From the sequence record OQ031493.1: a DNA stretch of 64,000 nucleotides. One strand, written 5' to 3'. Below the pieces are notes generated by a model, which was not told where the DNA came from, made no database searches, and worked only from the letters and a program-made list of their open reading frames with translations. Positions 3,922 through 57,989 of the stretch are shown here, one piece after another. Within the stretch, counting starts at the first letter, position 1, and each line of letters begins with the position of its first letter. The translations under genes and the position numbers were made by a program.

Positions 3922-3939
3922 GCCTCCCCGAAGGGAGGC
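3922..3939 (-). terminator. terminator of sheath-tube operon
   Basis: GC stem, UUCG loop and U-rich tail on the minus strand. Confidence 0.85.
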
Positions 3940-24946: not shown

Positions 24947-24966
24947 GCCCTCCCCGAAGGGAGGGT
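24947..24966 (-). terminator. intrinsic terminator
   Basis: UUCG-loop GC stem with U-tract. Confidence 0.8.
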
Positions 24967-31177: not shown

Positions 31178-31199
31178 ACCCTCCCTTAATTGGGAGGGT
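31178..31199 (+). terminator. terminator, identical to 32852-32873
   Basis: accctccc-ttaatt-gggagggt. Confidence 0.75.
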
Positions 31200-32851: not shown

Positions 32852-32873
32852 ACCCTCCCTTAATTGGGAGGGT
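32852..32873 (+). terminator. terminator
   Basis: Identical 22-mer to 31178-31199. Confidence 0.75.
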
Positions 32874-32928: not shown

Positions 32929-34812
32929 ATGAATAAAATGCTAAACTTCCTAAACCGTACGCTATATAGCGGTACTGAAAAAGTATCTTCAAAAGCTACA
33001 CCAAGTCTAGAACACTTTAAAACAAATGTTGAACAAGTAGATAAAAAGATTCTACAACCCTTTAGTACTAAATTTAAAACCATTCTAAAAGAATGTTACA
33101 GTAATGAAGAGTGGGTTGAAGAACAATCATTTATTGAAGAACCTATTGATCTTGGTTCAGCTGCACGCGGTCTTACCGAGCGCGGTATTATGCGTGGTGA
33201 TTGGGGACGCTTAGCGCATTCCACTATTAAAGAAGCAGAAGGTATGATGCGTACTTATAGTGGTCGTCTAAATGAAGATATGGAGGCATCTGAAATTAAT
33301 GAAGTAATTCAAGATATGCCTTATAACTTCACAGCTGGCTCAGCTAATACTAGCCGTTTAGAAGAAGATGATTCTATTTTTGTTGAAGCAGATACAACTG
33401 TAGTTGAACCTCTGTCTAAGCAGACTCTGCCAAAAGTAGCAGAACTTACTAACCAACTAGTAGAAGTTTATAACCGAATCACTGAAGAATTTACAGAAAC
33501 TGGTATTGCTAAAGTTGAACAAGTTGAACAGCCAGCAGTTCTTGTAGCACTTGGTGAGATCATTAGTAGTTTTAATAAACTAATTGATGCTTCATGTGGT
33601 GCTCTACCAGTGGAAGAAACTGTTATTGTAGAGGAGGATCCGTTACCTGCCATTGTTACTGGTCCAACTACTGAACCCATTGATGGTGAAATTCCACCTG
33701 TTGATGCTATTAATAATTCTGCGGCATTAGAAGAGTTTATTGAAGAAGTACTAAGTACTAATCCAGAATTCATTAAATACCAAAGTATGAATGATAGTAA
33801 TATTGATTCATATCTAACTGGAGATGACTGGATTATACTAAAATTTAAAGATGGTTCTTATTATTTATACAATGCCCAGAGTGCTGGTGAAACAAATATA
33901 GAAATCATGAAAGATATGGCCGAAACTGGTAGTGGTCTTAATGGTTTTATAAATCGAGTTATTCGTGGCGGGTATGTAGAGAAGTCCATCGTTAATACTC
34001 CCGGTTTTATACAAGTCTCAAATGAAGGTCTTATCGACACCATTAAGAGTATCTTCGACTCTGGCCCTGAGATCAATCTTGATAAAAAGAAGAAAGCTAT
34101 TGCTACACTGAAAAGTACCTATGGTGATGCCAAATGGGTGGCAGAAGCAAAGCTTAAAACCGGCGAAGTAAAAGTATCGAGTTACGAGACGTTCGCGTCT
34201 AATGATCCTAAGACCGCAAAAGCCAATATCACTAATGCTGTAGCTAAAGCTGATCGTCACAACCAGAAAGTTCTGGATGAGAACAGTAAGATACTAGCCC
34301 CCGTGGTTAATCTGTTCAAAGGGAATGATTGGCAAGACCCTAAGAAAGTCGCTACTCTTCTGGCTGAATGGAAACCCAATGTAAAGACAAACTTCCAAGA
34401 ACCCAAATGGCCAGATAATGCTGGTGCTAAGATTAAGTTGCTTGATGCTACCGGTATTGTGGAAGCAGCTAACGTTATCATTGACGTTCTGTCTAACAAC
34501 ACTAAGACTATTGCGGACACTTGGGTAGCCCAGTATCCTGACCTATCTGTCAATGGGGATATCTACAAACATAAGCTATCCACTATTAAAGATAAAGATG
34601 CTCTTGAGGATGTATATCTGCTGGCTAAAAGGGCCGATAATGCCATTCTTAACATTCATGCATCGTACGACGACGCTAAGGTTGAATCTACATATCGAGT
34701 ATTTGCTATCGACATGTTGAAACTAATGCAAGCATCTGTCAGTAGCTTCCCAAGTGGTTCAACCGTAGAGAACACCAATGAACGCAATACGGTCATTGGT
34801 ATTGAAGAATAA
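32929..34812 (+). CDS. internal head/ejection protein (gp303-like)
   Basis: 627 aa with S-x-E processing-type motifs (SLE, SNE, VSNEGLIDTIK), acidic linker, KTSC-like insert; synteny. Confidence 0.65.
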   Translation: MNKMLNFLNRTLYSGTEKVSSKATPSLEHFKTNVEQVDKKILQPFSTKFKTILKECYSNEEWVEEQSFIEEPIDLGSAARGLTERGIMRGDWGRLAHSTIKEAEGMMRTYSGRLNEDMEASEINEVIQDMPYNFTAGSANTSRLEEDDSIFVEADTTVVEPLSKQTLPKVAELTNQLVEVYNRITEEFTETGIAKVEQVEQPAVLVALGEIISSFNKLIDASCGALPVEETVIVEEDPLPAIVTGPTTEPIDGEIPPVDAINNSAALEEFIEEVLSTNPEFIKYQSMNDSNIDSYLTGDDWIILKFKDGSYYLYNAQSAGETNIEIMKDMAETGSGLNGFINRVIRGGYVEKSIVNTPGFIQVSNEGLIDTIKSIFDSGPEINLDKKKKAIATLKSTYGDAKWVAEAKLKTGEVKVSSYETFASNDPKTAKANITNAVAKADRHNQKVLDENSKILAPVVNLFKGNDWQDPKKVATLLAEWKPNVKTNFQEPKWPDNAGAKIKLLDATGIVEAANVIIDVLSNNTKTIADTWVAQYPDLSVNGDIYKHKLSTIKDKDALEDVYLLAKRADNAILNIHASYDDAKVESTYRVFAIDMLKLMQASVSSFPSGSTVENTNERNTVIGIEE

Positions 34813-34832
34813 CTTACTGAGTATGTAATGAT

Positions 34833-34975
34833 ATGTAGAAATGATCCCTCCCCCTCGTTTCTACATTAGTCATAATAAATCGGAGCCAGTCCCCCTTCCA
34901 ACTGGCTCCCAGAGAGTAAAACTCTTTGCTGGGCATTAATGACGATATATCGCCTCCCTTCGGGGAGGCTTTATA
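34833..34975 (+). ncRNA. candidate sRNA / structured 3'UTR with C-rich loops
   Basis: Three hairpins (loops UCCCUCCCCC and CCCCCUUCCA) followed by a UUCG terminator. Confidence 0.5.
34952..34969 (+). terminator. intrinsic terminator
   Basis: gcctccc-ttcg-gggaggc-tttatatttt. Confidence 0.85.
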
Positions 34976-35032
34976 TTTTGTTTTTACGTATGTATATTAA
35001 AATATGTATAAACAACATAGAGTAATTATAAA

Positions 35033-35485
35033 ATGATCAAAAATGAACTTTTACCAGGGCTAATCTATGCCCAAAAAGAATTTGATAAAATTGCAGCTAA
35101 TGTAAAAGACTATGATAAGTATAAAAGACGCGAAGCTGGTAGGGCAAGTGCCGTTTTAAGAAGTCTAGTGAGCAATATTGTAAATCAGAATAAACCATCC
35201 TCACTTGAACATGAAGGCAAAGTTAGTACTACTAATACTAATGAATATTTAGAAGAAGTTAATAATTACTTCTTTAACATTAATAATATTAAATTAATTT
35301 CTCCTAAACTCATAAAAGAGAAATTAACAATTGATCTAATGAATATTTATGTTAAATGGAATATGATTGGAGTGGCTGGCCGAAATGATGTTCCAATTAT
35401 TGAACACAGAATTAATGATTGGTGCGAAGTGACCGATGTCTACATTAATGGTAATAAGATAACTTCTTTACAATGGCCACGTTGA
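35033..35485 (+). CDS. hypothetical protein
   Basis: 150 aa ORF. Confidence 0.75.
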   Translation: MIKNELLPGLIYAQKEFDKIAANVKDYDKYKRREAGRASAVLRSLVSNIVNQNKPSSLEHEGKVSTTNTNEYLEEVNNYFFNINNIKLISPKLIKEKLTIDLMNIYVKWNMIGVAGRNDVPIIEHRINDWCEVTDVYINGNKITSLQWPR

Positions 35486-35543: not shown

Positions 35544-35628
35544 GCCCGAATGGTGAAATTGGTAAACACAGAAGACTTAAAATCTTCCGGCTACGGTCTT
35601 GTCGGTTCGAATCCGACTTCGGGCACCA
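35544..35628 (+). tRNA. tRNA-Leu(TAA)
   Basis: Cloverleaf, long variable arm, gaaga-ctTAAaa-tcttc, encoded CCA. Confidence 0.95.
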
Positions 35629-35637
35629 ATTTAAATA

Positions 35638-35713
35638 CGGAGTGTAGCGCAGTTGGTAGCGCGCCTGCTTTGGGAGCAGGATGTCGGGAGTTCGAGTCTC
35701 CCCACTCCGACCA
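35638..35713 (+). tRNA. tRNA-Pro(TGG)
   Basis: cctgc-ttTGGga-gcagg, TTCGA T-loop, CCA. Confidence 0.95.
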
Positions 35714-35734
35714 TTTTAATAATAGGTAAATAGG

Positions 35735-36028
35735 ATGGATAATAAATGGATATCATGGGAACATCAAATTATAGGAACAGCTCTTTACGCTATTCTTAGT
35801 GACCCTGAATTAACTAATATTCAATTAGCTCAAGGCTTACACTATCTAACAGAAGCAAAGTCTTCTGTATTACATGTTTGTAATAACCATATTACATTCA
35901 CTGTAACCTATCCACATGGCACATTTAGAACCAATGTAATTAGAGAGTGCCCTGCTAGTGATACAAATACATTCAAATGGTCAGGTGTATTAGTCCGTCA
36001 AAAAGATGGAACATTCTTACCAGAATAA
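35735..36028 (+). CDS. hypothetical protein
   Basis: 97 aa between tRNAs, AGG RBS. Confidence 0.7.
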   Translation: MDNKWISWEHQIIGTALYAILSDPELTNIQLAQGLHYLTEAKSSVLHVCNNHITFTVTYPHGTFRTNVIRECPASDTNTFKWSGVLVRQKDGTFLPE

Positions 36029-36035
36029 ATAAAAA

Positions 36036-36112
36036 GGGCCTATAGCTCAGTTGGTTAGAGCAGGCGACTCATAATCGCTTGGTCGCAGGTTCAAGTCCTG
36101 CTGGGCCCACCA
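36036..36112 (+). tRNA. tRNA with CAT anticodon, probably Ile2 (lysidine) rather than Met
   Basis: ggcga-ctCATaa-tcgct; C4-G69/C5-G68 pairs; body resembles gammaproteobacterial ileX. Confidence 0.9.
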
Positions 36113-36164
36113 TATACTAGCCTCCCACTTGGGGGAGGTTTTATACTGTCTCATTGAGGAAAAC

Positions 36165-36386
36165 ATGAATACAGTAATAATGTTGGTATTATCTATCAAA
36201 GTTGGATTATTTGGTTTCATTTCGACTAATGAAAGTAATATCCTATTTGAAAATAGGGAACAGTGTATTTCTCATCTGGATATTCTGGAACATAAATACA
36301 AGTCTCTTGAAGTTATTCGAAATGAGAATACTCTAAAGATAACCGAAAGAGATAACCATTCTATTTATATTTTTAAATGTCTCTAG
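36165..36386 (+). CDS. small protein with N-terminal hydrophobic segment
   Basis: GAGGA RBS favours ATG 36165. Confidence 0.65.
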   Translation: MNTVIMLVLSIKVGLFGFISTNESNILFENREQCISHLDILEHKYKSLEVIRNENTLKITERDNHSIYIFKCL

Positions 36387-36682
36387 GAAAATACATGGAA
36401 CATCAAGAACAAAAAGAACTATTGAGACAACCATTACAAACACTTTATAATCTTACTTTTAGTCCCCGTTTACGTAATGGAGCGAAGGCTCCCGATTGGA
36501 TTCACCTGACCGATGAAGTAACCCTATTCCCAAACGAATTAGATATTACAATCAACGCTGTTACACGTTGCATCAAATGGGAACTTATCGGCGAGGATGT
36601 AAGTAACATTACTTATGTTGAAGCTATGTTCTTTAATAAAGGTCTTAAAGCAGTTAAAGCCTATCTCAAACATACGGAGTAA
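36377..36682 (+). CDS. hypothetical protein
   Basis: ~101 aa, tight packing. Confidence 0.7.
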   Translation: MSLGKYMEHQEQKELLRQPLQTLYNLTFSPRLRNGAKAPDWIHLTDEVTLFPNELDITINAVTRCIKWELIGEDVSNITYVEAMFFNKGLKAVKAYLKHTE

Positions 36683-36684
36683 AT

Positions 36685-37032
36685 ATGGATCATCTAACCC
36701 CAACGCAGAGCGCTGTATATTTCACATTTATTAGCCCTGAGTTTATAAAGCTAACTCTTGTTGAATCTTTTGTAGCGATCCACAAGAAACATCCAGAAGT
36801 AAAGCATTGCGTTAAGAAAAAGATTAGTGCTAATGAAACGCAGTTTATCTTTATCTTCAAAGATGGGACTGATAATTTAATCATTACACGTAAAACTGAA
36901 CCTTGCCCTGAACTGGATAGCCCAGTAGGCGATAGTATTAAGTTGTCCGGCGAAGAACTTAAAAATATTCTTGCTAAGTACGATCGTCCCAAGGATGGTA
37001 ACTATTTCAAGCACTGGACTGATCGCCCGTAA
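36685..37032 (+). CDS. hypothetical protein
   Basis: 115 aa, GGAG RBS. Confidence 0.75.
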   Translation: MDHLTPTQSAVYFTFISPEFIKLTLVESFVAIHKKHPEVKHCVKKKISANETQFIFIFKDGTDNLIITRKTEPCPELDSPVGDSIKLSGEELKNILAKYDRPKDGNYFKHWTDRP

Positions 37033-37084
37033 TAAAATATTACTGGTTATGTAATACTATGTAGGAAGTCATGTCCATACGTTT

Positions 37085-37161
37085 GCGCTCATAGTTCAGT
37101 TGGTTAGAATACCCGCCTGTCACGCGGGTGGTCAGGGGTTCGAGTCCCCTTGGGCGCGCCA
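37085..37161 (+). tRNA. tRNA-Asp(GTC)
   Basis: cccgc-ctGTCac-gcggg, CCA. Confidence 0.95.
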
Positions 37162-37167
37162 TTTAAT

Positions 37168-37243
<76 letters not shown>

Positions 37244-37250
37244 TATTCTA

Positions 37251-37272
37251 AAGAGTAGCTTCGGCTACTCTT
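37251..37272 (+). terminator. terminator after tRNA pair
   Basis: aagagtagc-ttcg-gctactctt-tt. Confidence 0.85.
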
Positions 37273-37327
37273 TTATGTTGCCATGGGTTATCTTATGAAT
37301 TAAAATGATTTACTTGAGAGCACACTC

Positions 37328-38335
37328 ATGTTTGAATTACTATTATCACCAGATATAGGCGAAGAGTTACCCTTGGTTGGATTTAATGAAATTATTAAAT
37401 TAGGTGATCTACCTGTAGCGTTAGCTGGTACAATGTCATATGTGGATGGAAATACACTGTATGTTGGATCTGGTCATCATACTGAAGGACAAACAGCTGC
37501 AACTGTGTTCAGACGTTTTACCATATCGCCATTTGCCGATATAGGTGCAACTGCTTCTGGAACATTCTTACCAGGGGTATCTTTAGGATTTGGGACATTA
37601 CATAAGAATAACTTTATTGTTTATGGCGGTATTACTGGATGGAACTCGGCTGGTAATGGTGGTACGGGAACATCTAACTTTATACAACATTTTGATATAG
37701 CTACAGGCAATAGGGTTGAGCGATATAGTGGTCCCGTACCACTTTGGGGCACAGCCTCCGCATCAGATGGTAATGATCTTATTCTATGCGTTAACCCAAT
37801 TGGCGTAAACGCAATGCGATTAAAACCATCAAGTAAGTCTTGGCTTAGCGGGCAAGACTATTCAGGTGGTGCTCGTTCAGGTCAACAGTTATTCTTTTAT
37901 AATGGTTACTTTTACCATTTTGGTGGTTGGGATAATACAAAGAACATACCTAATCTTGAAGTTTATCGATATAATGCAACTACCTTAATATGGGAGCAAA
38001 CACCTTGGATGATTATACCTGCTGATAAAGGAACAATCTGGCAAGGTAATGGTTATGTAGATGGGGACTATTTTAATTACCTTAACGCTGTTGATGTCGG
38101 CGGTGTAACTAAAATGTTTGCACAACGTTTTAATATTAGGCGCCGGAAATGGGCTGAACCATTTGAACTAGGTATCGGATTCCTTAATATTTCATCTATA
38201 GCTAAAGGTCCGGATAATAGCATGATCATTGTAGGTGGATCTAAAATGCCAGTTGGTGGTGGAGCATATATGTTGAAAAGCCAATTGTTATCAGGTATCT
38301 ATCAGGTAAAACTAGCACCATTAATCATTGATTAA
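37328..38335 (+). CDS. Kelch-like beta-propeller protein, probably virion/tail-associated
   Basis: Repeated hydrophobic-GG motifs (VYGG, HFGG, IVGG) with spaced Y/W; MFELLL N-terminus recalled from phiKZ tail paralog families. Confidence 0.7.
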   Translation: MFELLLSPDIGEELPLVGFNEIIKLGDLPVALAGTMSYVDGNTLYVGSGHHTEGQTAATVFRRFTISPFADIGATASGTFLPGVSLGFGTLHKNNFIVYGGITGWNSAGNGGTGTSNFIQHFDIATGNRVERYSGPVPLWGTASASDGNDLILCVNPIGVNAMRLKPSSKSWLSGQDYSGGARSGQQLFFYNGYFYHFGGWDNTKNIPNLEVYRYNATTLIWEQTPWMIIPADKGTIWQGNGYVDGDYFNYLNAVDVGGVTKMFAQRFNIRRRKWAEPFELGIGFLNISSIAKGPDNSMIIVGGSKMPVGGGAYMLKSQLLSGIYQVKLAPLIID

Positions 38336-38417
38336 AATAATAATATTTATAACTATTTAGATAATTATACTGGCACGATGATATTATGTAAGAGTACTAT
38401 AATAAAGTATTCTTAAA

Positions 38418-38500
38418 TCTATCCACTAAACACACTCGGTGGTAGAACTTATTATAGAGTGTGTCTAAATGCCAGGGGTTTGCCACCCCTGGTTATATTC
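38418..38500 (+). ncRNA. candidate H-type pseudoknot followed by a hairpin
   Basis: S1 38418-26/38439-46, S2 38430-37/38457-64, then ccagggg-tttgcca-cccctgg. Confidence 0.35.
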
Positions 38501-38619
38501 ATTGTTACTATTATAAATTCATTTATAGATGAGAAAAGGTTTTATCACCTTTTCAAAATCGGCATTTAATTCCAGTTAAAAAACTGAATCTATGCTACAT
38601 TGTAATAAAGGAGTCTATT

Positions 38620-39132
38620 ATGACTAACTCTAATCAGTTTGTAAGAACTATTGTAAAGTACCAAGATATCCTAGATGCTTTAATTCAAAAAACGAATGAG
38701 AACTGGGTTAATTATCGATCTAATTCTATTGGTCATATTGTTATTCGTGAATACAGGACTGTTGGATTATTTGTAGGTCGGCAATGTGGTAGTACAACTG
38801 CATTGATTGAGTTTGCTAATCGTCATCCTGGCGAATGTCTAGCTGTATTTGTAGAAGATAAAATTAAACAGGCTGTACTGGCTAAGTTCCAGAATGCTAA
38901 AGATAATATTGTTTCTTGTTTAATTACACACCAACTCCGTAAATATATTCATCAACCTGAGGAATCATCTATTCAAAAAGATATTAAAGAAGAATTAATA
39001 TCGTCTGTAAAATATATTCTTGTTGACAATGCCTCATTTAATCTGAACCTACGCGGTATCACTGATAAAGAATTTAACCAGTGGGTTGCAGATACTTTTG
39101 GTACAGAGGTAATGGTGGTTCGTTTTAGTTAG
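38620..39132 (+). CDS. degenerate P-loop NTPase-like protein
   Basis: VGRQCGSTT (Walker A-like, K to S) and YILVDN (Walker B-like). Confidence 0.55.
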   Translation: MTNSNQFVRTIVKYQDILDALIQKTNENWVNYRSNSIGHIVIREYRTVGLFVGRQCGSTTALIEFANRHPGECLAVFVEDKIKQAVLAKFQNAKDNIVSCLITHQLRKYIHQPEESSIQKDIKEELISSVKYILVDNASFNLNLRGITDKEFNQWVADTFGTEVMVVRFS

Positions 39133-39293
39133 AATTAGTAACTTTGATAGTTTCTAATAAGATTAACTACACGTTATTTACATAATGTCATAACAAGAAA
39201 TAAATAATACTCAGATTGTAATAATATGTAGTTATTACATATCTATATTAGGTTGTCAGTAACTCATCTCTAATATAAAATCGCCATAATTCT

Positions 39294-39369
39294 TCCGTGA
39301 TAGCTCAGTCGGTAGAGCAAATGACTGTTAATCACTGGGTCCCTGGTTCGAGTCCAGGTCACGGAGCCA
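39294..39369 (+). tRNA. tRNA-Asn(GTT) copy 2
   Basis: Identical to copy 1 except one G>A in the anticodon stem. Confidence 0.92.
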
Positions 39370-39413
39370 ATTCATAGTTTTAGATTTAGTTATATTTCAC
39401 TACTATGTAAACT

Positions 39414-39439
39414 ATAAAGGCAGCTAATGCTGCCTTTAT
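39414..39439. terminator. bidirectional terminator
   Basis: ataaaggcagc-taat-gctgcctttat. Confidence 0.85.
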
Positions 39440-39500
39440 GTCGTCTTGTAAAAGTACCCAGTAGTTGAATCTTATAGCTGAATACAAATAGGGTAAAGAC

Positions 39501-39686
39501 ATGTCACTTAAAGCATTGCAAGATATAGTTAGTAGTGTTCCTACAAATGAACAAAAGGAACGATTAGTTAAAGTTCGGAAAACGATGGAAGAGCTAAATG
39601 AGTCTATTAAGAATCAGATTCGTAATAAACGACCTAGTCAAGCTCTTCTCGACAAAACGATAAACTGGGGTACCAAGTATGGCTAA
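39501..39686 (+). CDS. small coiled-coil protein
   Basis: 61 aa overlapping the next gene. Confidence 0.65.
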   Translation: MSLKALQDIVSSVPTNEQKERLVKVRKTMEELNESIKNQIRNKRPSQALLDKTINWGTKYG

Positions 39687-39969
39687 GACATTAGTTCGTG
39701 CAAAGCTGATTACTGAGGCTGGTCAATGGATGTCGTCTGACTGGGAATGTGGTTTCCGTGCATGTCGATTCGTGAAACTTGGTAATGATCATGTAAACAT
39801 AAAAGACTTTGAGGCTATGATCACGGCATTCGAAGTTGGTGACATGTTAGTGATTTGGCCAAATGGGCTTAGAACTTCGTATAGTGTGGATAATTTCAAT
39901 AAGTACTTTTCCCATATCAAAGATGAATACCATGAGACTGATCTCCGTCCACTCTTTTACCCCAAGTAG
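39679..39969 (+). CDS. hypothetical protein
   Basis: 96 aa. Confidence 0.7.
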   Translation: MAKTLVRAKLITEAGQWMSSDWECGFRACRFVKLGNDHVNIKDFEAMITAFEVGDMLVIWPNGLRTSYSVDNFNKYFSHIKDEYHETDLRPLFYPK

Positions 39970-40440
39970 TTGAGCTTATGATAACTATATTCGTGTATAA
40001 ATACATTACATTCGTTATATCCTTTAATTGATTGAAATCAAGCTACATAAAAGTGATTGAATGGTCCATGTAGGTGATAATTTTAATAAAGGTAAAGGAT
40101 TTATCAGAGAATATCTCAGTGCATTTAGGTATTTTATCACTCGCCTATCTAAATCACATAAAGCCCTTTACCGAGGAATGTGAGAATGTTGGTTGCGATT
40201 GATAATACTGGGACAGAATATGATGTCGACCCAACTGATGAAGTAGACGTAATGTTTGTATTTAGACCCACACTAAAATAACTTTATATGACTTAATACC
40301 CCTCTATATAGAGTGGTCTATTTATAAGTAAAATTATACATAGAGTTAATATTATTTGTAGATTAGTTCTACACATAACTCAACTTGAAACCGGGTGTTA
40401 ATAAAATTTAACACTACGGAAAACATAAAGGTGTATAAAA

Positions 40441-41070
40441 ATGGCTTTTCATTTTACTGAAGTAGATTTAAATGATTTTATCAATGAATCAGGTAAAGAC
40501 TTAAAAATAAATGTTGGTAAACAAACACTAGCAGTTTATGATATCGATAGGCTAAATATTGTTAATTCAACTATTAATAAACTAGTTTATAATGAACCTA
40601 TAAGTGAAGAACACATAGATGCATCACTTACAGATAATTCATTAAAAGAGCTTAATGATTATTTACTAAATGTTGGTGTTACTGAAAGCGCTAAAATGAT
40701 GATTGATGCTGTGTTAGAATTAAGCGATTATCATAAAAGTGATGAATACTTTAACCCAATGATGTATAAATTAAAAAGTATGCACACTAAAAATACAGAT
40801 GGTGTTTATTTGATATTTTTACCAACGCCTACTATCGATGATCAAATTAACACCATGCAAGGGTATATTATCAATAAATCCGGTAATCTCATTAGGACTA
40901 CTGTACAGTCATGGCGATTTGAGAAAATTGAATTCAAAGACTTAGCCAAACATGATAGACGTTGGTTATTTATTGAATATTACATTAATGTTAAACAAAC
41001 GAAAAATAATATAATCAAAGAGCAACAAGATGAATTAACTAAATTTATTTATTATAGTACTCTAAGTTAA
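40441..41070 (+). CDS. hypothetical protein
   Basis: 209 aa, AAGG RBS. Confidence 0.8.
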   Translation: MAFHFTEVDLNDFINESGKDLKINVGKQTLAVYDIDRLNIVNSTINKLVYNEPISEEHIDASLTDNSLKELNDYLLNVGVTESAKMMIDAVLELSDYHKSDEYFNPMMYKLKSMHTKNTDGVYLIFLPTPTIDDQINTMQGYIINKSGNLIRTTVQSWRFEKIEFKDLAKHDRRWLFIEYYINVKQTKNNIIKEQQDELTKFIYYSTLS

Positions 41071-41094
41071 AACAAATAAAAAAATAAATATAAG

Positions 41095-41117
41095 AGCTAG
41101 CCCCTAATGGGCTAGCT
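41095..41117. terminator. bidirectional terminator
   Basis: agctagccc-ctaat-gggctagct between convergent genes. Confidence 0.8.
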
Positions 41118-41127
41118 TTATGTTATC

Positions 41128-41265
41128 TTACTCTGCTACATCTTTTACATCAGGTTTATTATTCCAACGTACTGCTCTCGCAATACCATACGTAAGAATA
41201 AGAGCACCTACGGTGCCAATAGTGGTGCTAATAATAATGCCAAGAGTTTTTGGATCAATATTCAT
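41128..41265 (-). CDS. small single-TM protein (45 aa)
   Basis: MNIDPKTLGIIISTTIGTVGALILTYGIARAVRW...; AGGA RBS and own early-promoter cassette. Confidence 0.65.
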   Translation of the reverse strand: MNIDPKTLGIIISTTIGTVGALILTYGIARAVRWNNKPDVKDVAE

Positions 41266-41306
41266 ATTTAGTATCCTATTTACAATTAATAGAAAATATT
41301 ACTTTT

Positions 41307-41350
41307 AGTAATATCAAGTTAATGATATACTGTTTAAATATGTTTGAATA
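41307..41350 (-). promoter_or_regulatory. early promoter cassette, partial copy (core TATATCAT)
   Basis: atatcaagtta.tgatatactgtttaaatatgtttgaata matches 24165-24205 closely. Confidence 0.7.
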
Positions 41351-41412
41351 TAACTTTATTTATTATAATAAATAAAATAATACTTTCATATACACTATAT
41401 GTAGAAGATTCC

Positions 41413-41489
41413 GCCGCTATAGCTCAGCTAGGTAGAGCAACGCACTTGTAATGCGTAGGTCCTCCGTTCGATTCGGAGTGGCGGCACCA
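41413..41489 (+). tRNA. tRNA-Thr(TGT)
   Basis: acgca-ctTGTaa-tgcgt, CCA. Confidence 0.95.
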
Positions 41490-44881: not shown

Positions 44882-44924
44882 TTTCACCCCTTATAATAAA
44901 ATAAATAGGCTTAAGCGAAATAAA

Positions 44925-44944
44925 GCCCTCCCCGAAGGGAGGGC
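44925..44944 (-). terminator. intrinsic terminator
   Basis: UUCG-loop GC stem with U-tract. Confidence 0.85.
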
Positions 44945-44957
44945 ATTATCAATAGGT

Positions 44958-45021
44958 GGGATCTCGGCGGCACCTTCATTTGCGGACGGGAACGCTGAAG
45001 GGAGATAGTCCGGGAGATCCC
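44958..45021 (-). ncRNA. GC-rich nested stem-loop in a 3'UTR
   Basis: gggatctc/gagatccc outer stem, ccttca/tgaagg and gcg/cgc inner stems. Confidence 0.4.
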
Positions 45022-45047
45022 GATTTGGGTATTCTTTACATATGGTA

Positions 45048-57971: not shown

Positions 57972-57989
57972 GCCTCCCCGAAGGGAGGC
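57972..57989 (-). terminator. intrinsic terminator
   Basis: Same 18-mer as 3922-3939. Confidence 0.8.

What the first reader, a model, noticed from the sequence alone, without database searches (positions are those of the whole stretch)
34833..34975. Candidate regulatory RNA with anti-Shine-Dalgarno-like C-rich loops
Seen: between the head-protein stop and a UUCG terminator lie three hairpins: a 12-bp stem (34833-44/34855-66) with loop UCCCUCCCCC; a perfect 9-bp stem ggagccagt/actggctcc with loop CCCCCUUCCA; and cag-agagt/actct-ttg-ctg. Exposed C-rich loops are striking in a roughly one-third-GC genome. Established: C-rich loops (e.g. S. aureus RNAIII) pair with SD sequences. On the opposite strand the loops display GGA, the CsrA/RsmA-binding motif of Pseudomonas RsmY/RsmZ. 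Inference: a 3'UTR-derived sRNA that blocks ribosome-binding sites or, if antisense, an RsmA sponge. This is the best candidate here for an undescribed system.
Basis: partly seen in the sequence, partly recalled or inferred. Interest (0 to 1): 0.78.

Follow-up and report, generated by a model that had tools for sequence, protein, structure and literature searches.

The report
Known phiKZ-type phage small RNA
The hairpins are real and form the PA7 copy of a 141-nt small RNA already detected by sequencing and northern blot in jumbo phage phiKZ; its job is still unknown, but its exposed C-rich loops are conserved across three phage genera.

Summary
The window is a PA7/phiKZ-type jumbo phage of Pseudomonas aeruginosa. 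The three hairpins and the UUCG terminator are present as described, between the orthologues of PHIKZ303 (structural head protein) and PHIKZ302.

This is not an undescribed system. In phiKZ the identical stretch is transcription unit TU237. It is a 141-nt RNA with its own late promoter (P144), ending at terminator T131. It was confirmed by northern blot and listed as an ncRNA candidate of unknown function (Putzeys et al. 2024).

New here:
- The RNA is conserved in Phikzvirus, Pawinskivirus and Miltoncavirus (phiPA3).
- All three stems show compensatory changes, and a closing helix is predicted in each genus.
- The loop CCCUUCCA is invariant, and loop 1 is always C/U-rich.
- The downstream gene differs between genera, so this is a stand-alone sRNA gene rather than a leader of PHIKZ302.
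- It is single-copy, and no complementary site lies on any coding strand of the phage.
- The closest Rfam model is ar14 (cuckoo/NfeR1, anti-SD loops), but the match is far below threshold.

The antisense RsmA-sponge idea has no support. Anti-SD-type pairing remains the leading hypothesis, but it is untested.

The parts
32929..34812 (+). Upstream gene, orthologue of PHIKZ303 (virion structural / head protein). In phiKZ its mRNA (TU238) ends at the same terminator as the sRNA.
   Evidence: ORF list; annotation; TU238.
34813..34835 (+). Late-type promoter, orthologue of phiKZ P144. The motif TATGTAATGNTATGTAGA is conserved in three genera. The TSS maps to about 34836 (+/-1-2 nt).
   Evidence: P144 TSS 274148(-), classed 'late promoter'; coordinate mapping through the alignment; conservation.
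34836..34863 (+). Hairpin 1 at the 5' end of the RNA. Stem 34836-44 with 34855-63; loop L1 at 34845-54 (UCCCUCCCCC). The genomic inverted repeat extends to 34833-34866.
   Evidence: Covariation G-C to A-U in phiKZ and U-G / C-G / U-A in Pawinskivirus. L1 is always C/U-rich (CUCC or CCUUCC).
34869..34873 (+). 5' strand of the closing helix (GUCAU). It pairs with 34939-34943 and encloses hairpins 2 and 3.
   Evidence: MFE and centroid. An analogous closing helix is predicted in Pawinskivirus and phiPA3 and by RNAalifold. The register differs between genera.
34882..34909 (+). Hairpin 2: a perfect 9-bp stem with loop L3 at 34891-34900. The core CCCUUCCA is invariant in Phikzvirus, Pawinskivirus and phiPA3.
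   Evidence: 100% of cells are paired, with pair types GC/AU/CG and CG/UA/UG at the two loop-proximal pairs. Loop invariance.
34910..34928 (+). Hairpin 3: stem 34910-17 with 34921-28, loop AAA.
   Evidence: One pair shows GC/AU/UA types. All Pawinskivirus copies carry one A.C mismatch.
34939..34943 (+). 3' strand of the closing helix (AUGAC).
34952..34977 (+). Intrinsic terminator, orthologue of phiKZ T131: GCCUCCC-UUCG-GGGAGGC plus UUUAUAUU. The RNA 3' end maps to about 34977.
   Evidence: T131 TTS 274007(-), 'intrinsic'; terminator scan. It matches the conserved phiKZ terminator motif quoted.
34985..35007 (+). Second late promoter, orthologue of phiKZ P143, with TSS at about 35007. It lies directly after the terminator and serves the PHIKZ302 orthologue and the tRNA cluster.
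   Evidence: P143 TSS 273977(-); 100% identity of this stretch to phiKZ.
35033..35485 (+). Downstream gene, orthologue of PHIKZ302. It is not next to the RNA in Pawinskivirus or phiPA3.

Best explanation
Window 34836-34977 (+) is the PA7 copy of a stand-alone small-RNA gene of P. aeruginosa nucleus-forming jumbo phages. In phiKZ the same RNA is TU237, also listed as '5'UTR_PHIKZ302'. It is transcribed by the phage non-virion RNA polymerase from a late promoter placed just after the stop codon of the head-protein gene, and it ends at the intrinsic terminator that also ends that gene's mRNA.

The RNA folds into a 5'-terminal hairpin, a junction domain carrying two further hairpins, and the terminator. 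The structured 5' and 3' ends would explain why it accumulates (inferred).

The parts under sequence selection are the single-stranded C/U-rich loops: L1 (CUCC or CCUUCC type) and L3 (invariant CCCUUCCA). The most likely mode of action, which is inferred and not shown, is trans-acting. The loops would serve as seeds that pair with G-rich, Shine-Dalgarno-like stretches of another RNA, as the anti-SD loops of alpha-proteobacterial ar14/NfeR1/CcsR RNAs do. No complementary site lies on a coding strand of the phage, so the partner is more likely a host RNA.

My probabilities: about 0.95 for identity as the published RNA; about 0.8 for a stand-alone gene rather than a PHIKZ302 leader; about 0.35-0.4 for loop-mediated RNA pairing. 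The single confidence figure given for this explanation (0.45) is for the statement as a whole, mechanism included.
For: Identity and expression:
- The window is 100% identical to PA7-type phages and 97-100% identical to phiKZ over the RNA.
- phiKZ P144 (TSS 274148-), T131 (TTS 274007-) and TU237 (141 nt, northern probe JVO-21409) are reported.
- TU238 shares T131, and P143 lies just after it.

Structure:
- z = -6.4, -5.4, -3.5 and -4.0 for the PA7, phiKZ, PS119XW and phiPA3 copies.
- 94.6% of cells are paired, against 37-50% in slid controls. Five pairs change on both sides.
- RNAalifold independently recovers the three hairpins plus a closing helix, with 7 compensated pairs.

Loops are the constrained part:
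- CCCUUCCA is invariant in three genera that are about 73-79% identical overall, while its closing pairs covary.
- Loop unpaired probability is 1.0.
- The C-rich-loop hairpins are unique in the genome.

Stand-alone gene:
- The promoter motif is conserved.
- The downstream neighbour is PHIKZ302 in Phikzvirus, tRNA-Leu in Pawinskivirus and gp374 in phiPA3.
- PHIKZ302 has its own promoter after the terminator.

Analogy: the best Rfam alignment places L1 and L3 on the CCUCCUCCC loops of ar14. ar14/NfeR1 and CcsR loops act as anti-SD seeds. Pawinskivirus and phiPA3 copies carry further CUCCU(U) motifs.
Against: - No target has been identified.
- In the 267-kb phage genome, complements of L3 or L1 of 7-8 nt occur only in terminator 3' arms (paired), on non-coding strands or inside ORFs. 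None sits at a true start codon.
- Phage SDs are short AGGA/AAGG/GAGG types.
- The host genome could not be searched with these tools.
- L3 (CCCUUCCA) is not a canonical anti-SD (CCUCC), and phiKZ L1 lacks CUCC.
- The promoter is of late type, and by my recollection of the literature (not checked here) little host mRNA remains late in infection.
- A folded junction with one invariant loop would fit a protein-binding site equally well.
- Expression was measured in phiKZ, not in PA7.
Confidence: 0.45

Rival explanations
1. Protein-binding RNA (decoy, sponge or scaffold). The junction presents the invariant loop CCCUUCCA and the C/U-rich L1 as a binding site for a phage or host protein that recognises C-rich single strands. 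One candidate would be a factor that also reads the CCYCCC arm of the conserved phiKZ terminators.
For: One loop is invariant on a covarying helix within a conserved multi-helix fold. No RNA target exists in the phage. phiKZ terminators share a conserved C-rich sequence that resembles the loops. The RNA is reported as abundant.
Against: No candidate protein is known and no protein data were available here. Two or more C/U-rich motifs of differing sequence are more typical of redundant pairing seeds. This could not be tested with the tools at hand.
Confidence: 0.2
2. Cis-acting leader, the reading of the paper that found it. The RNA is the prematurely terminated 5'UTR of PHIKZ302 and the tRNA operon, and conditional read-through of T131 tunes late expression of the downstream genes.
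For: In phiKZ, read-through units TU233-236 run from P144 to PHIKZ302 and the tRNAs. The authors propose conditional termination. In all three genera a tRNA-Leu gene lies 40 nt to 1 kb downstream.
Against: The gene next to the RNA is not conserved. PHIKZ302 has its own late promoter 30 nt after the terminator. No conserved antiterminator exists: complementarity between the loops and the terminator 3' arm falls to 4 nt in Pawinskivirus and phiPA3 (sequences). Invariance of the loop sequence is not needed for attenuation.
Confidence: 0.15
3. No trans function. The hairpins are a 3'UTR stability or insulation module of the head-protein mRNA. The 141-nt species is a stable by-product of a minimal TATG promoter that happens to lie upstream of the terminator.
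For: The element is part of the TU238 3'UTR. Late promoters are short TATG-type motifs. Hairpins at the 5' and 3' ends would stabilise any transcript.
Against: The promoter motif and the loop sequence are conserved across three genera, while the neighbouring 3' coding region of gene 303 is almost unalignable even between PA7 and phiKZ. A pure stabiliser needs stems, not an invariant 8-nt loop.
Confidence: 0.15
4. Antisense-strand RNA whose GGA-bearing loops sponge RsmA/RsmN, like RsmY/RsmZ.
For: On the - strand the loops would read UUGGAAGG and GGGGGAGGGA.
Against: No TSS or TTS on that strand is listed at phiKZ 2738xx-2743xx. The - strand folds at only z = -2.6. No Rsm family hit appears even at E up to 10. 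The published table prints the RNA in antisense orientation by a slip, which could mislead readers toward this idea.
Confidence: 0.02
5. Near-leaderless mRNA for a 32-aa proline-rich peptide (ATG at 34841, MIPPPRF...).
For: An ORF runs from 34841 to 34939, starting 5 nt from the 5' end.
Against: The start codon is ATA in phiKZ. Pawinskivirus has no ATG and a 4-nt indel in the loop. The AUG lies inside the stem of hairpin 1.
Confidence: 0.01

Closest known systems
phiKZ ncRNA candidate TU237 / '5'UTR_PHIKZ302' (Putzeys et al. 2024, microLife, PMC10914365; bioRxiv 10.1101/2023.10.13.562163, Table S7)
   Same: Same locus (between the 303 and 302 orthologues), same strand, same promoter motif and the same terminator. 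The sequence is 97-100% identical.
   Different: The window is a PA7-type genome, where expression has not been measured. Loop 1 differs by one base, and one stem pair is G-C instead of A-U. The paper classes the RNA as 5'UTR-derived; the comparative data here argue for a stand-alone or type-I 3'UTR gene.
ar14 / NfeR1 / CcsR 'cuckoo' sRNAs of Alphaproteobacteria (Rfam RF02344)
   Same: Several hairpins, each exposing a C/U-rich anti-SD-like loop on stems of differing sequence. Some family members derive from UTRs. This is the best Rfam alignment.
   Different: The score is 19.9 bits against a gathering score of 58.8. The loops are CCCUCCCCC and CCCCCUUCCA, not the ultraconserved CCUCCUCCC. The RNA belongs to a phage of a gammaproteobacterium, and no target has been shown.
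UCCC-motif sRNAs of Staphylococcus aureus
   Same: Exposed UCCC-containing loops that pair with SD regions.
   Different: No homology, a Gram-positive chromosomal setting, and no target evidence here.
Type I 3'UTR sRNAs such as DapZ or MicL (class definition from my own knowledge; a review, PMC9438474, is in the library but I did not read it)
   Same: Own promoter at the 3' end of the upstream gene, and a terminator shared with that gene's mRNA.
   Different: The promoter lies after the stop codon and is read by a phage RNA polymerase. Hfq dependence is unknown.
RsmY/RsmZ CsrA-family sponges
   Same: Multi-hairpin small RNA of a Pseudomonas system.
   Different: The transcribed strand shows C-rich loops, not GGA loops. 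No Rfam match and no antisense transcript.

Membership tests
phiKZ TU237 ncRNA candidate (orthologue) | Lies between the PHIKZ303 and PHIKZ302 orthologues on the coding strand | tested here: met
phiKZ TU237 ncRNA candidate (orthologue) | Late-promoter sequence at the TSS and the T131 terminator are conserved | tested here: met
   The TATGT at the TSS is conserved and the terminator is 100% identical.
phiKZ TU237 ncRNA candidate (orthologue) | A 141-nt transcript is actually made in this (PA7-type) phage | not testable with these tools
   Only phiKZ data exist.
Rfam RF02344 ar14 (cuckoo/NfeR1) | Covariance-model score at or above the gathering threshold of 58.8 bits | tested here: not met
   19.9 bits, E 0.05-0.07.
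Rfam RF02344 ar14 (cuckoo/NfeR1) | An identical CCUCCUCCC motif in each hairpin loop | tested here: not met
   The loops are UCCCUCCCCC and CCCCCUUCCA.
Anti-SD-type base-pairing sRNA (functional class) | C/U-rich motifs are single-stranded and conserved | tested here: met
   Unpaired probability 1.0. L3 is invariant and L1 is always C/U-rich.
Anti-SD-type base-pairing sRNA (functional class) | Complementary target sites at ribosome-binding sites of phage mRNAs | tested here: not met
   No complement of 7 nt or more at a genuine phage start codon.
Anti-SD-type base-pairing sRNA (functional class) | Complementary target sites at ribosome-binding sites of host (P. aeruginosa) mRNAs, and regulation of them | not testable with these tools
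RsmY/RsmZ-type RsmA sponge | Several GGA motifs in unpaired regions of the transcribed RNA | tested here: not met
   The two GGA triplets of the sense RNA are both in stems. No antisense TSS or TTS is reported. No Rfam hit.
Type I 3'UTR-derived sRNA | Own promoter, plus a terminator shared with the upstream mRNA | tested here: met
   Published phiKZ maps show P144 to T131 (TU237) and P145 to T131 (TU238).
Transcription-attenuating leader / riboswitch of the downstream gene | Conserved downstream gene and conserved alternative (antiterminator) pairing | tested here: not met
   The downstream gene differs between genera. Loop-terminator complementarity is not conserved. A separate promoter lies after the terminator.

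The most novel reading that the evidence does not exclude
The RNA would be the first functional trans-acting riboregulator of a nucleus-forming jumbo phage. In this reading it is an abundant late sRNA whose exposed, invariant C/U-rich loops mimic the ribosomal anti-SD. The loops would then either silence a defined set of G-rich (host-type) ribosome-binding sites while sparing the A-rich SDs of phage mRNAs, or titrate a factor that binds C-rich RNA.
Probability: 0.3. Interest if true: 0.7.

Novelty: already known. Interest (0 to 1): 0.4.

Why it matters
Small RNAs of virulent phages are almost entirely uncharacterised, and phiKZ is the model nucleus-forming jumbo phage. This RNA is one of the few phiKZ ncRNA candidates with northern confirmation.

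The comparative analysis here turns a transcript of unknown function into a testable object. It defines a conserved fold and two loops to mutate. It gives evidence that the RNA is a gene of its own, and a negative result for phage-internal targets that points the search to the host.

It also flags that the published table shows the RNA in the wrong orientation, which hides the C-rich loops from anyone working from that table.

As a discovery it is modest, because the RNA itself is already described.

Tried and rejected
- Rfam at gathering threshold found only the 7 tRNAs. At E up to 10 it gave only sub-threshold hits, the best being ar14.
- tRNA or tmRNA-like element: none found here.
- Peptide coding: the 32-aa ORF is not conserved.
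- Antisense RsmA sponge: no transcript, weak fold, no family hit.
- Antitermination by loop-terminator pairing: the complementarity is not conserved outside PA7/phiKZ.
- Phage-internal targets: exact-complement scans of the whole PA7-type genome gave only terminator arms, non-coding strands or ORF-internal sites.
- Paralogues: the covariance model finds a single copy per genome.
- Wider relatives: none downstream of the gp303 homologues of Phabio and 201phi2-1. IMG/VR pattern scans gave only PA7, phiPA3 and one GC-rich chance hit. All 20 metagenome pattern hits are partial, GC-rich chance matches. BLAST with the phiPA3 copy adds nothing.
- Literature search for a functional study of this RNA (RIL-seq, Hfq, sRNA with phiKZ) found none.
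- Host target prediction could not be done, because no P. aeruginosa genome is available in these tools.

Full report
**What the window is.** A 1-kb query around the finding matches 47 Pseudomonas jumbo-phage records. It is 100% identical to PA7-type genomes and has the same coordinates as record OQ031493. The finding lies in the 220-nt spacer between two genes. Upstream is the orthologue of PHIKZ303, annotated 'structural head protein' (window 32929-34812). Downstream is the orthologue of PHIKZ302 (35033-35485), which is followed by a tRNA cluster.

**The observation.**
- Hairpin 1: 12 bp with one G-U, loop UCCCUCCCCC.
- Hairpin 2: a perfect 9-bp stem, loop CCCCCUUCCA.
- Hairpin 3: 8 bp by RNAfold.
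- A GCCUCCC-UUCG-GGGAGGC terminator.

The + strand RNA 34836-34977 folds at -52 kcal/mol (z = -6.4; 0 of 200 shuffles as stable). The opposite strand gives only z = -2.6. Both C-rich loops have unpaired probability 1.0. The window is 36% GC with 18% C. A scan of the whole 267-kb genome on both strands finds no other hairpin with a stem of at least 9 bp and at least 7 C in a 10-nt loop.

**It is already described.** Putzeys et al. (microLife 2024, PMC10914365) mapped phiKZ transcripts by ONT-cappable-seq. [quoted passage not shown] It was confirmed by northern blot and proposed as a regulatory ncRNA candidate. Their supplementary tables give these units:
- P144: TSS 274148(-), 'late promoter'.
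- T131: TTS 274007(-), intrinsic terminator.
- TU237: 141 nt, northern probe JVO-21409.
- TU238: P145 to T131, covering PHIKZ304-303.
- TU233-236: read-through units from P144 into PHIKZ302 and the tRNAs.
- P143: a further late promoter with TSS 273977(-), just after T131.

The window and phiKZ are 97-100% identical from 34821 onwards. That maps the TSS to window 34836 (+/-1-2 nt), the 3' end to about 34977, and P143 to about 35007. The RNA is therefore on the + strand and carries the C-rich loops. Only 9 of the 12 bp of hairpin 1 lie inside it. I found no paper assigning it a function.

**A slip in the published table.** Table S7 prints this one RNA in antisense orientation: the printed sequence begins with the reverse complement of the terminator. 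The energy listed there, -48.70 kcal/mol, is reproduced exactly by folding the antisense strand of phiKZ. The sense strand gives -50.1 kcal/mol for the 142-nt stretch and -54.0 for the 143-nt stretch. Anyone working from that table would see G-rich loops instead of C-rich ones.

**Relatives and structure.** The element is present in every Phikzvirus record. At 73-79% identity it is also present in Pawinskivirus (PS119XW, PA1C, HPP-Temi, phiLBG22, phiHQ, BRkr) and in Miltoncavirus phiPA3. In each case it starts directly after the stop codon of the gp303-like structural gene.

It is absent downstream of the homologous genes of Phabio and 201phi2-1, which infect other Pseudomonas species. Pattern scans of IMG/VR and of metagenomes, and a covariance-model search, found no further members and no second copy in the genome.

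On an 8-sequence alignment, the three-hairpin structure has 94.6% of cells paired, against 37-50% when the partners are slid. Five pairs change on both sides. Examples:
- Hairpin 1: G-C in PA7 becomes A-U in phiKZ. Another position is U-G, C-G or U-A.
- Hairpin 2: 100% paired, with GC/AU/CG and CG/UA/UG at the two pairs next to the loop.
- Hairpin 3: GC/AU/UA at one pair.

RNAalifold, given no structure, returns the same three hairpins plus a closing helix around hairpins 2 and 3, with 7 compensated pairs. Single-sequence folds of the Pawinskivirus and phiPA3 RNAs also predict a closing helix.

**What is conserved at the sequence level.** Within hairpin 2 the stem varies, but the loop core CCCUUCCA is invariant in all three genera. 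Loop 1 varies in length but is always C/U-rich:
- PA7: CCCUCCCCC.
- phiKZ: CCUUCCCCC.
- Pawinskivirus: CACUCC.
- phiPA3: CUACUCCUC.

Pawinskivirus and phiPA3 RNAs are longer, at about 178 and 157 nt. They share a 20-nt segment, UUCUCCUUGUUGUGUUGAUG, ahead of the terminator. Pawinskivirus also has CCCCUCCUUUC. Both add CUCCU(U) motifs. The promoter motif TATGTAATGNTATGTAGA is conserved as well. By contrast, the last 500 nt of gene 303 are almost unalignable between PA7 and phiKZ, and identity jumps at 34821, the start of the sRNA promoter.

**Stand-alone gene or leader?** The published label is '5'UTR-derived (PHIKZ302)'. Three observations argue against a dedicated leader.
- The gene after the RNA differs between genera: PHIKZ302 in Phikzvirus, tRNA-Leu in Pawinskivirus, gp374 in phiPA3. 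The PHIKZ302 homologue of phiPA3 lies 1.8 kb further on.
- PHIKZ302 has its own late promoter 30 nt after the terminator.
- No conserved antiterminator pairing exists.

The terminator is shared with the 304-303 mRNA. The arrangement therefore fits the class of 'type I' 3'UTR sRNAs: own promoter, shared terminator.

**How it may work.** Shown: the transcript exists in phiKZ, the fold is conserved, and the loops are exposed and conserved. Inferred: the loops are the active sites.

The closest model in Rfam is ar14, at 19.9 bits against a gathering score of 58.8, so the RNA is not a member. The alignment puts L1 and L3 onto the CCUCCUCCC loops of that family. In ar14/NfeR1 and CcsR these loops are redundant anti-Shine-Dalgarno seeds that block ribosome-binding sites.

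I tested the phage as a target. Complements of L3 or L1 of 7-8 nt occur only in the paired 3' arms of the conserved terminators, on non-coding strands, or inside ORFs. None lies at a genuine start codon. Phage SDs are short AGGA/AAGG/GAGG/GGAA types. If the RNA pairs with another RNA, the partner is therefore more likely a host RNA, and I could not search the host genome.

A protein-binding role is a serious rival, because an invariant loop on a conserved junction fits that equally well. A cis attenuator and a functionless stable by-product are less likely for the reasons above. The antisense RsmA-sponge idea and a 32-aa peptide are disfavoured.

**Verdict.** The feature is real and non-random, and it was correctly spotted. 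But it is the orthologue of a published, northern-validated phiKZ ncRNA candidate, so the object is already known.

What this analysis adds:
- conservation across three genera, with covariation in the stems;
- an invariant C-rich loop;
- evidence for a stand-alone gene;
- absence of targets within the phage;
- the orientation slip in the published table.

The mechanism remains open. My estimate is about 0.35-0.4 for loop-mediated RNA pairing.

Noticed in passing
phiKZ 274007-274148 (-), equal to window 34836-34977; Table S7 of bioRxiv 10.1101/2023.10.13.562163: The published table prints this RNA in antisense orientation. Its listed energy of -48.70 kcal/mol is reproduced only by folding the antisense strand (sense gives -50.1 or -54.0). 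Other minus-strand entries in the same table are printed in sense orientation.
   Followed up: yes
window 34300-34835, compared with L002 3480-4015: There is a sharp mosaic boundary. The 3' part of the head-protein gene (the 303 orthologue) is almost unalignable between PA7-type and phiKZ-type phages. Identity jumps to 97-100% at 34821, exactly where the sRNA promoter starts.
   Followed up: partly
window 38389-38499 (+): This is the orthologue of a second published phiKZ ncRNA candidate (3'UTR_PHIKZ298 / 5'UTR_PHIKZ297). It also starts right after a TATGT motif and ends at a CCAGGGG...CCCCTGG terminator.
   Followed up: partly
window 44918-45037 (-): This is the orthologue of the phiKZ candidate 5'UTR_PHIKZ289. 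It folds at -46.6 kcal/mol (z = -4.4) and also exposes C/U-rich unpaired stretches (hairpin loop UUCCCGUC and internal loop ACUAUCUC). C-rich loops may therefore recur among phiKZ small RNAs.
   Followed up: partly
whole window, for example 2234-2250, 3923-3938, 24949-24964, 31180-31197, 32854-32871, 44927-44942, 57973-57988: GGGAGG occurs 29 times against 9.9 expected. Nearly all copies are palindromic pairs that form the conserved CCYCCC-loop-GGGRGG terminators of phiKZ-type phages. Their 5' arms resemble loops L1 and L3.
   Followed up: partly
L003 1629-1690 (PS119XW) and L009 4968-5005 (phiPA3): The Pawinskivirus and phiPA3 versions of the RNA carry an extra 20-nt segment, UUCUCCUUGUUGUGUUGAUG, identical between the two genera and absent from Phikzvirus. 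It contains another anti-SD-like CUCCUU motif.
   Followed up: partly
window 35544-41489: There are seven phage tRNA genes (Leu-UAA, Pro-UGG, Met-CAU, Asp-GUC, Asn-GUU twice, Thr-UGU). In Pawinskivirus, tRNA-Leu follows the sRNA terminator directly.
   Followed up: no
window 34841-34939 (+): A 32-codon ORF (MIPPPRF...) runs through the hairpins. Its start codon is ATA in phiKZ and is absent in Pawinskivirus, so it is not a gene.
   Followed up: yes
PA7-type genome 221429-221450 (-), equal to L023 7429-7450: A 7-bp hairpin with loop GCCCUUCC shares CCCUUCC with L3. It lies antisense inside a 971-aa ORF, so it is probably chance.
   Followed up: partly
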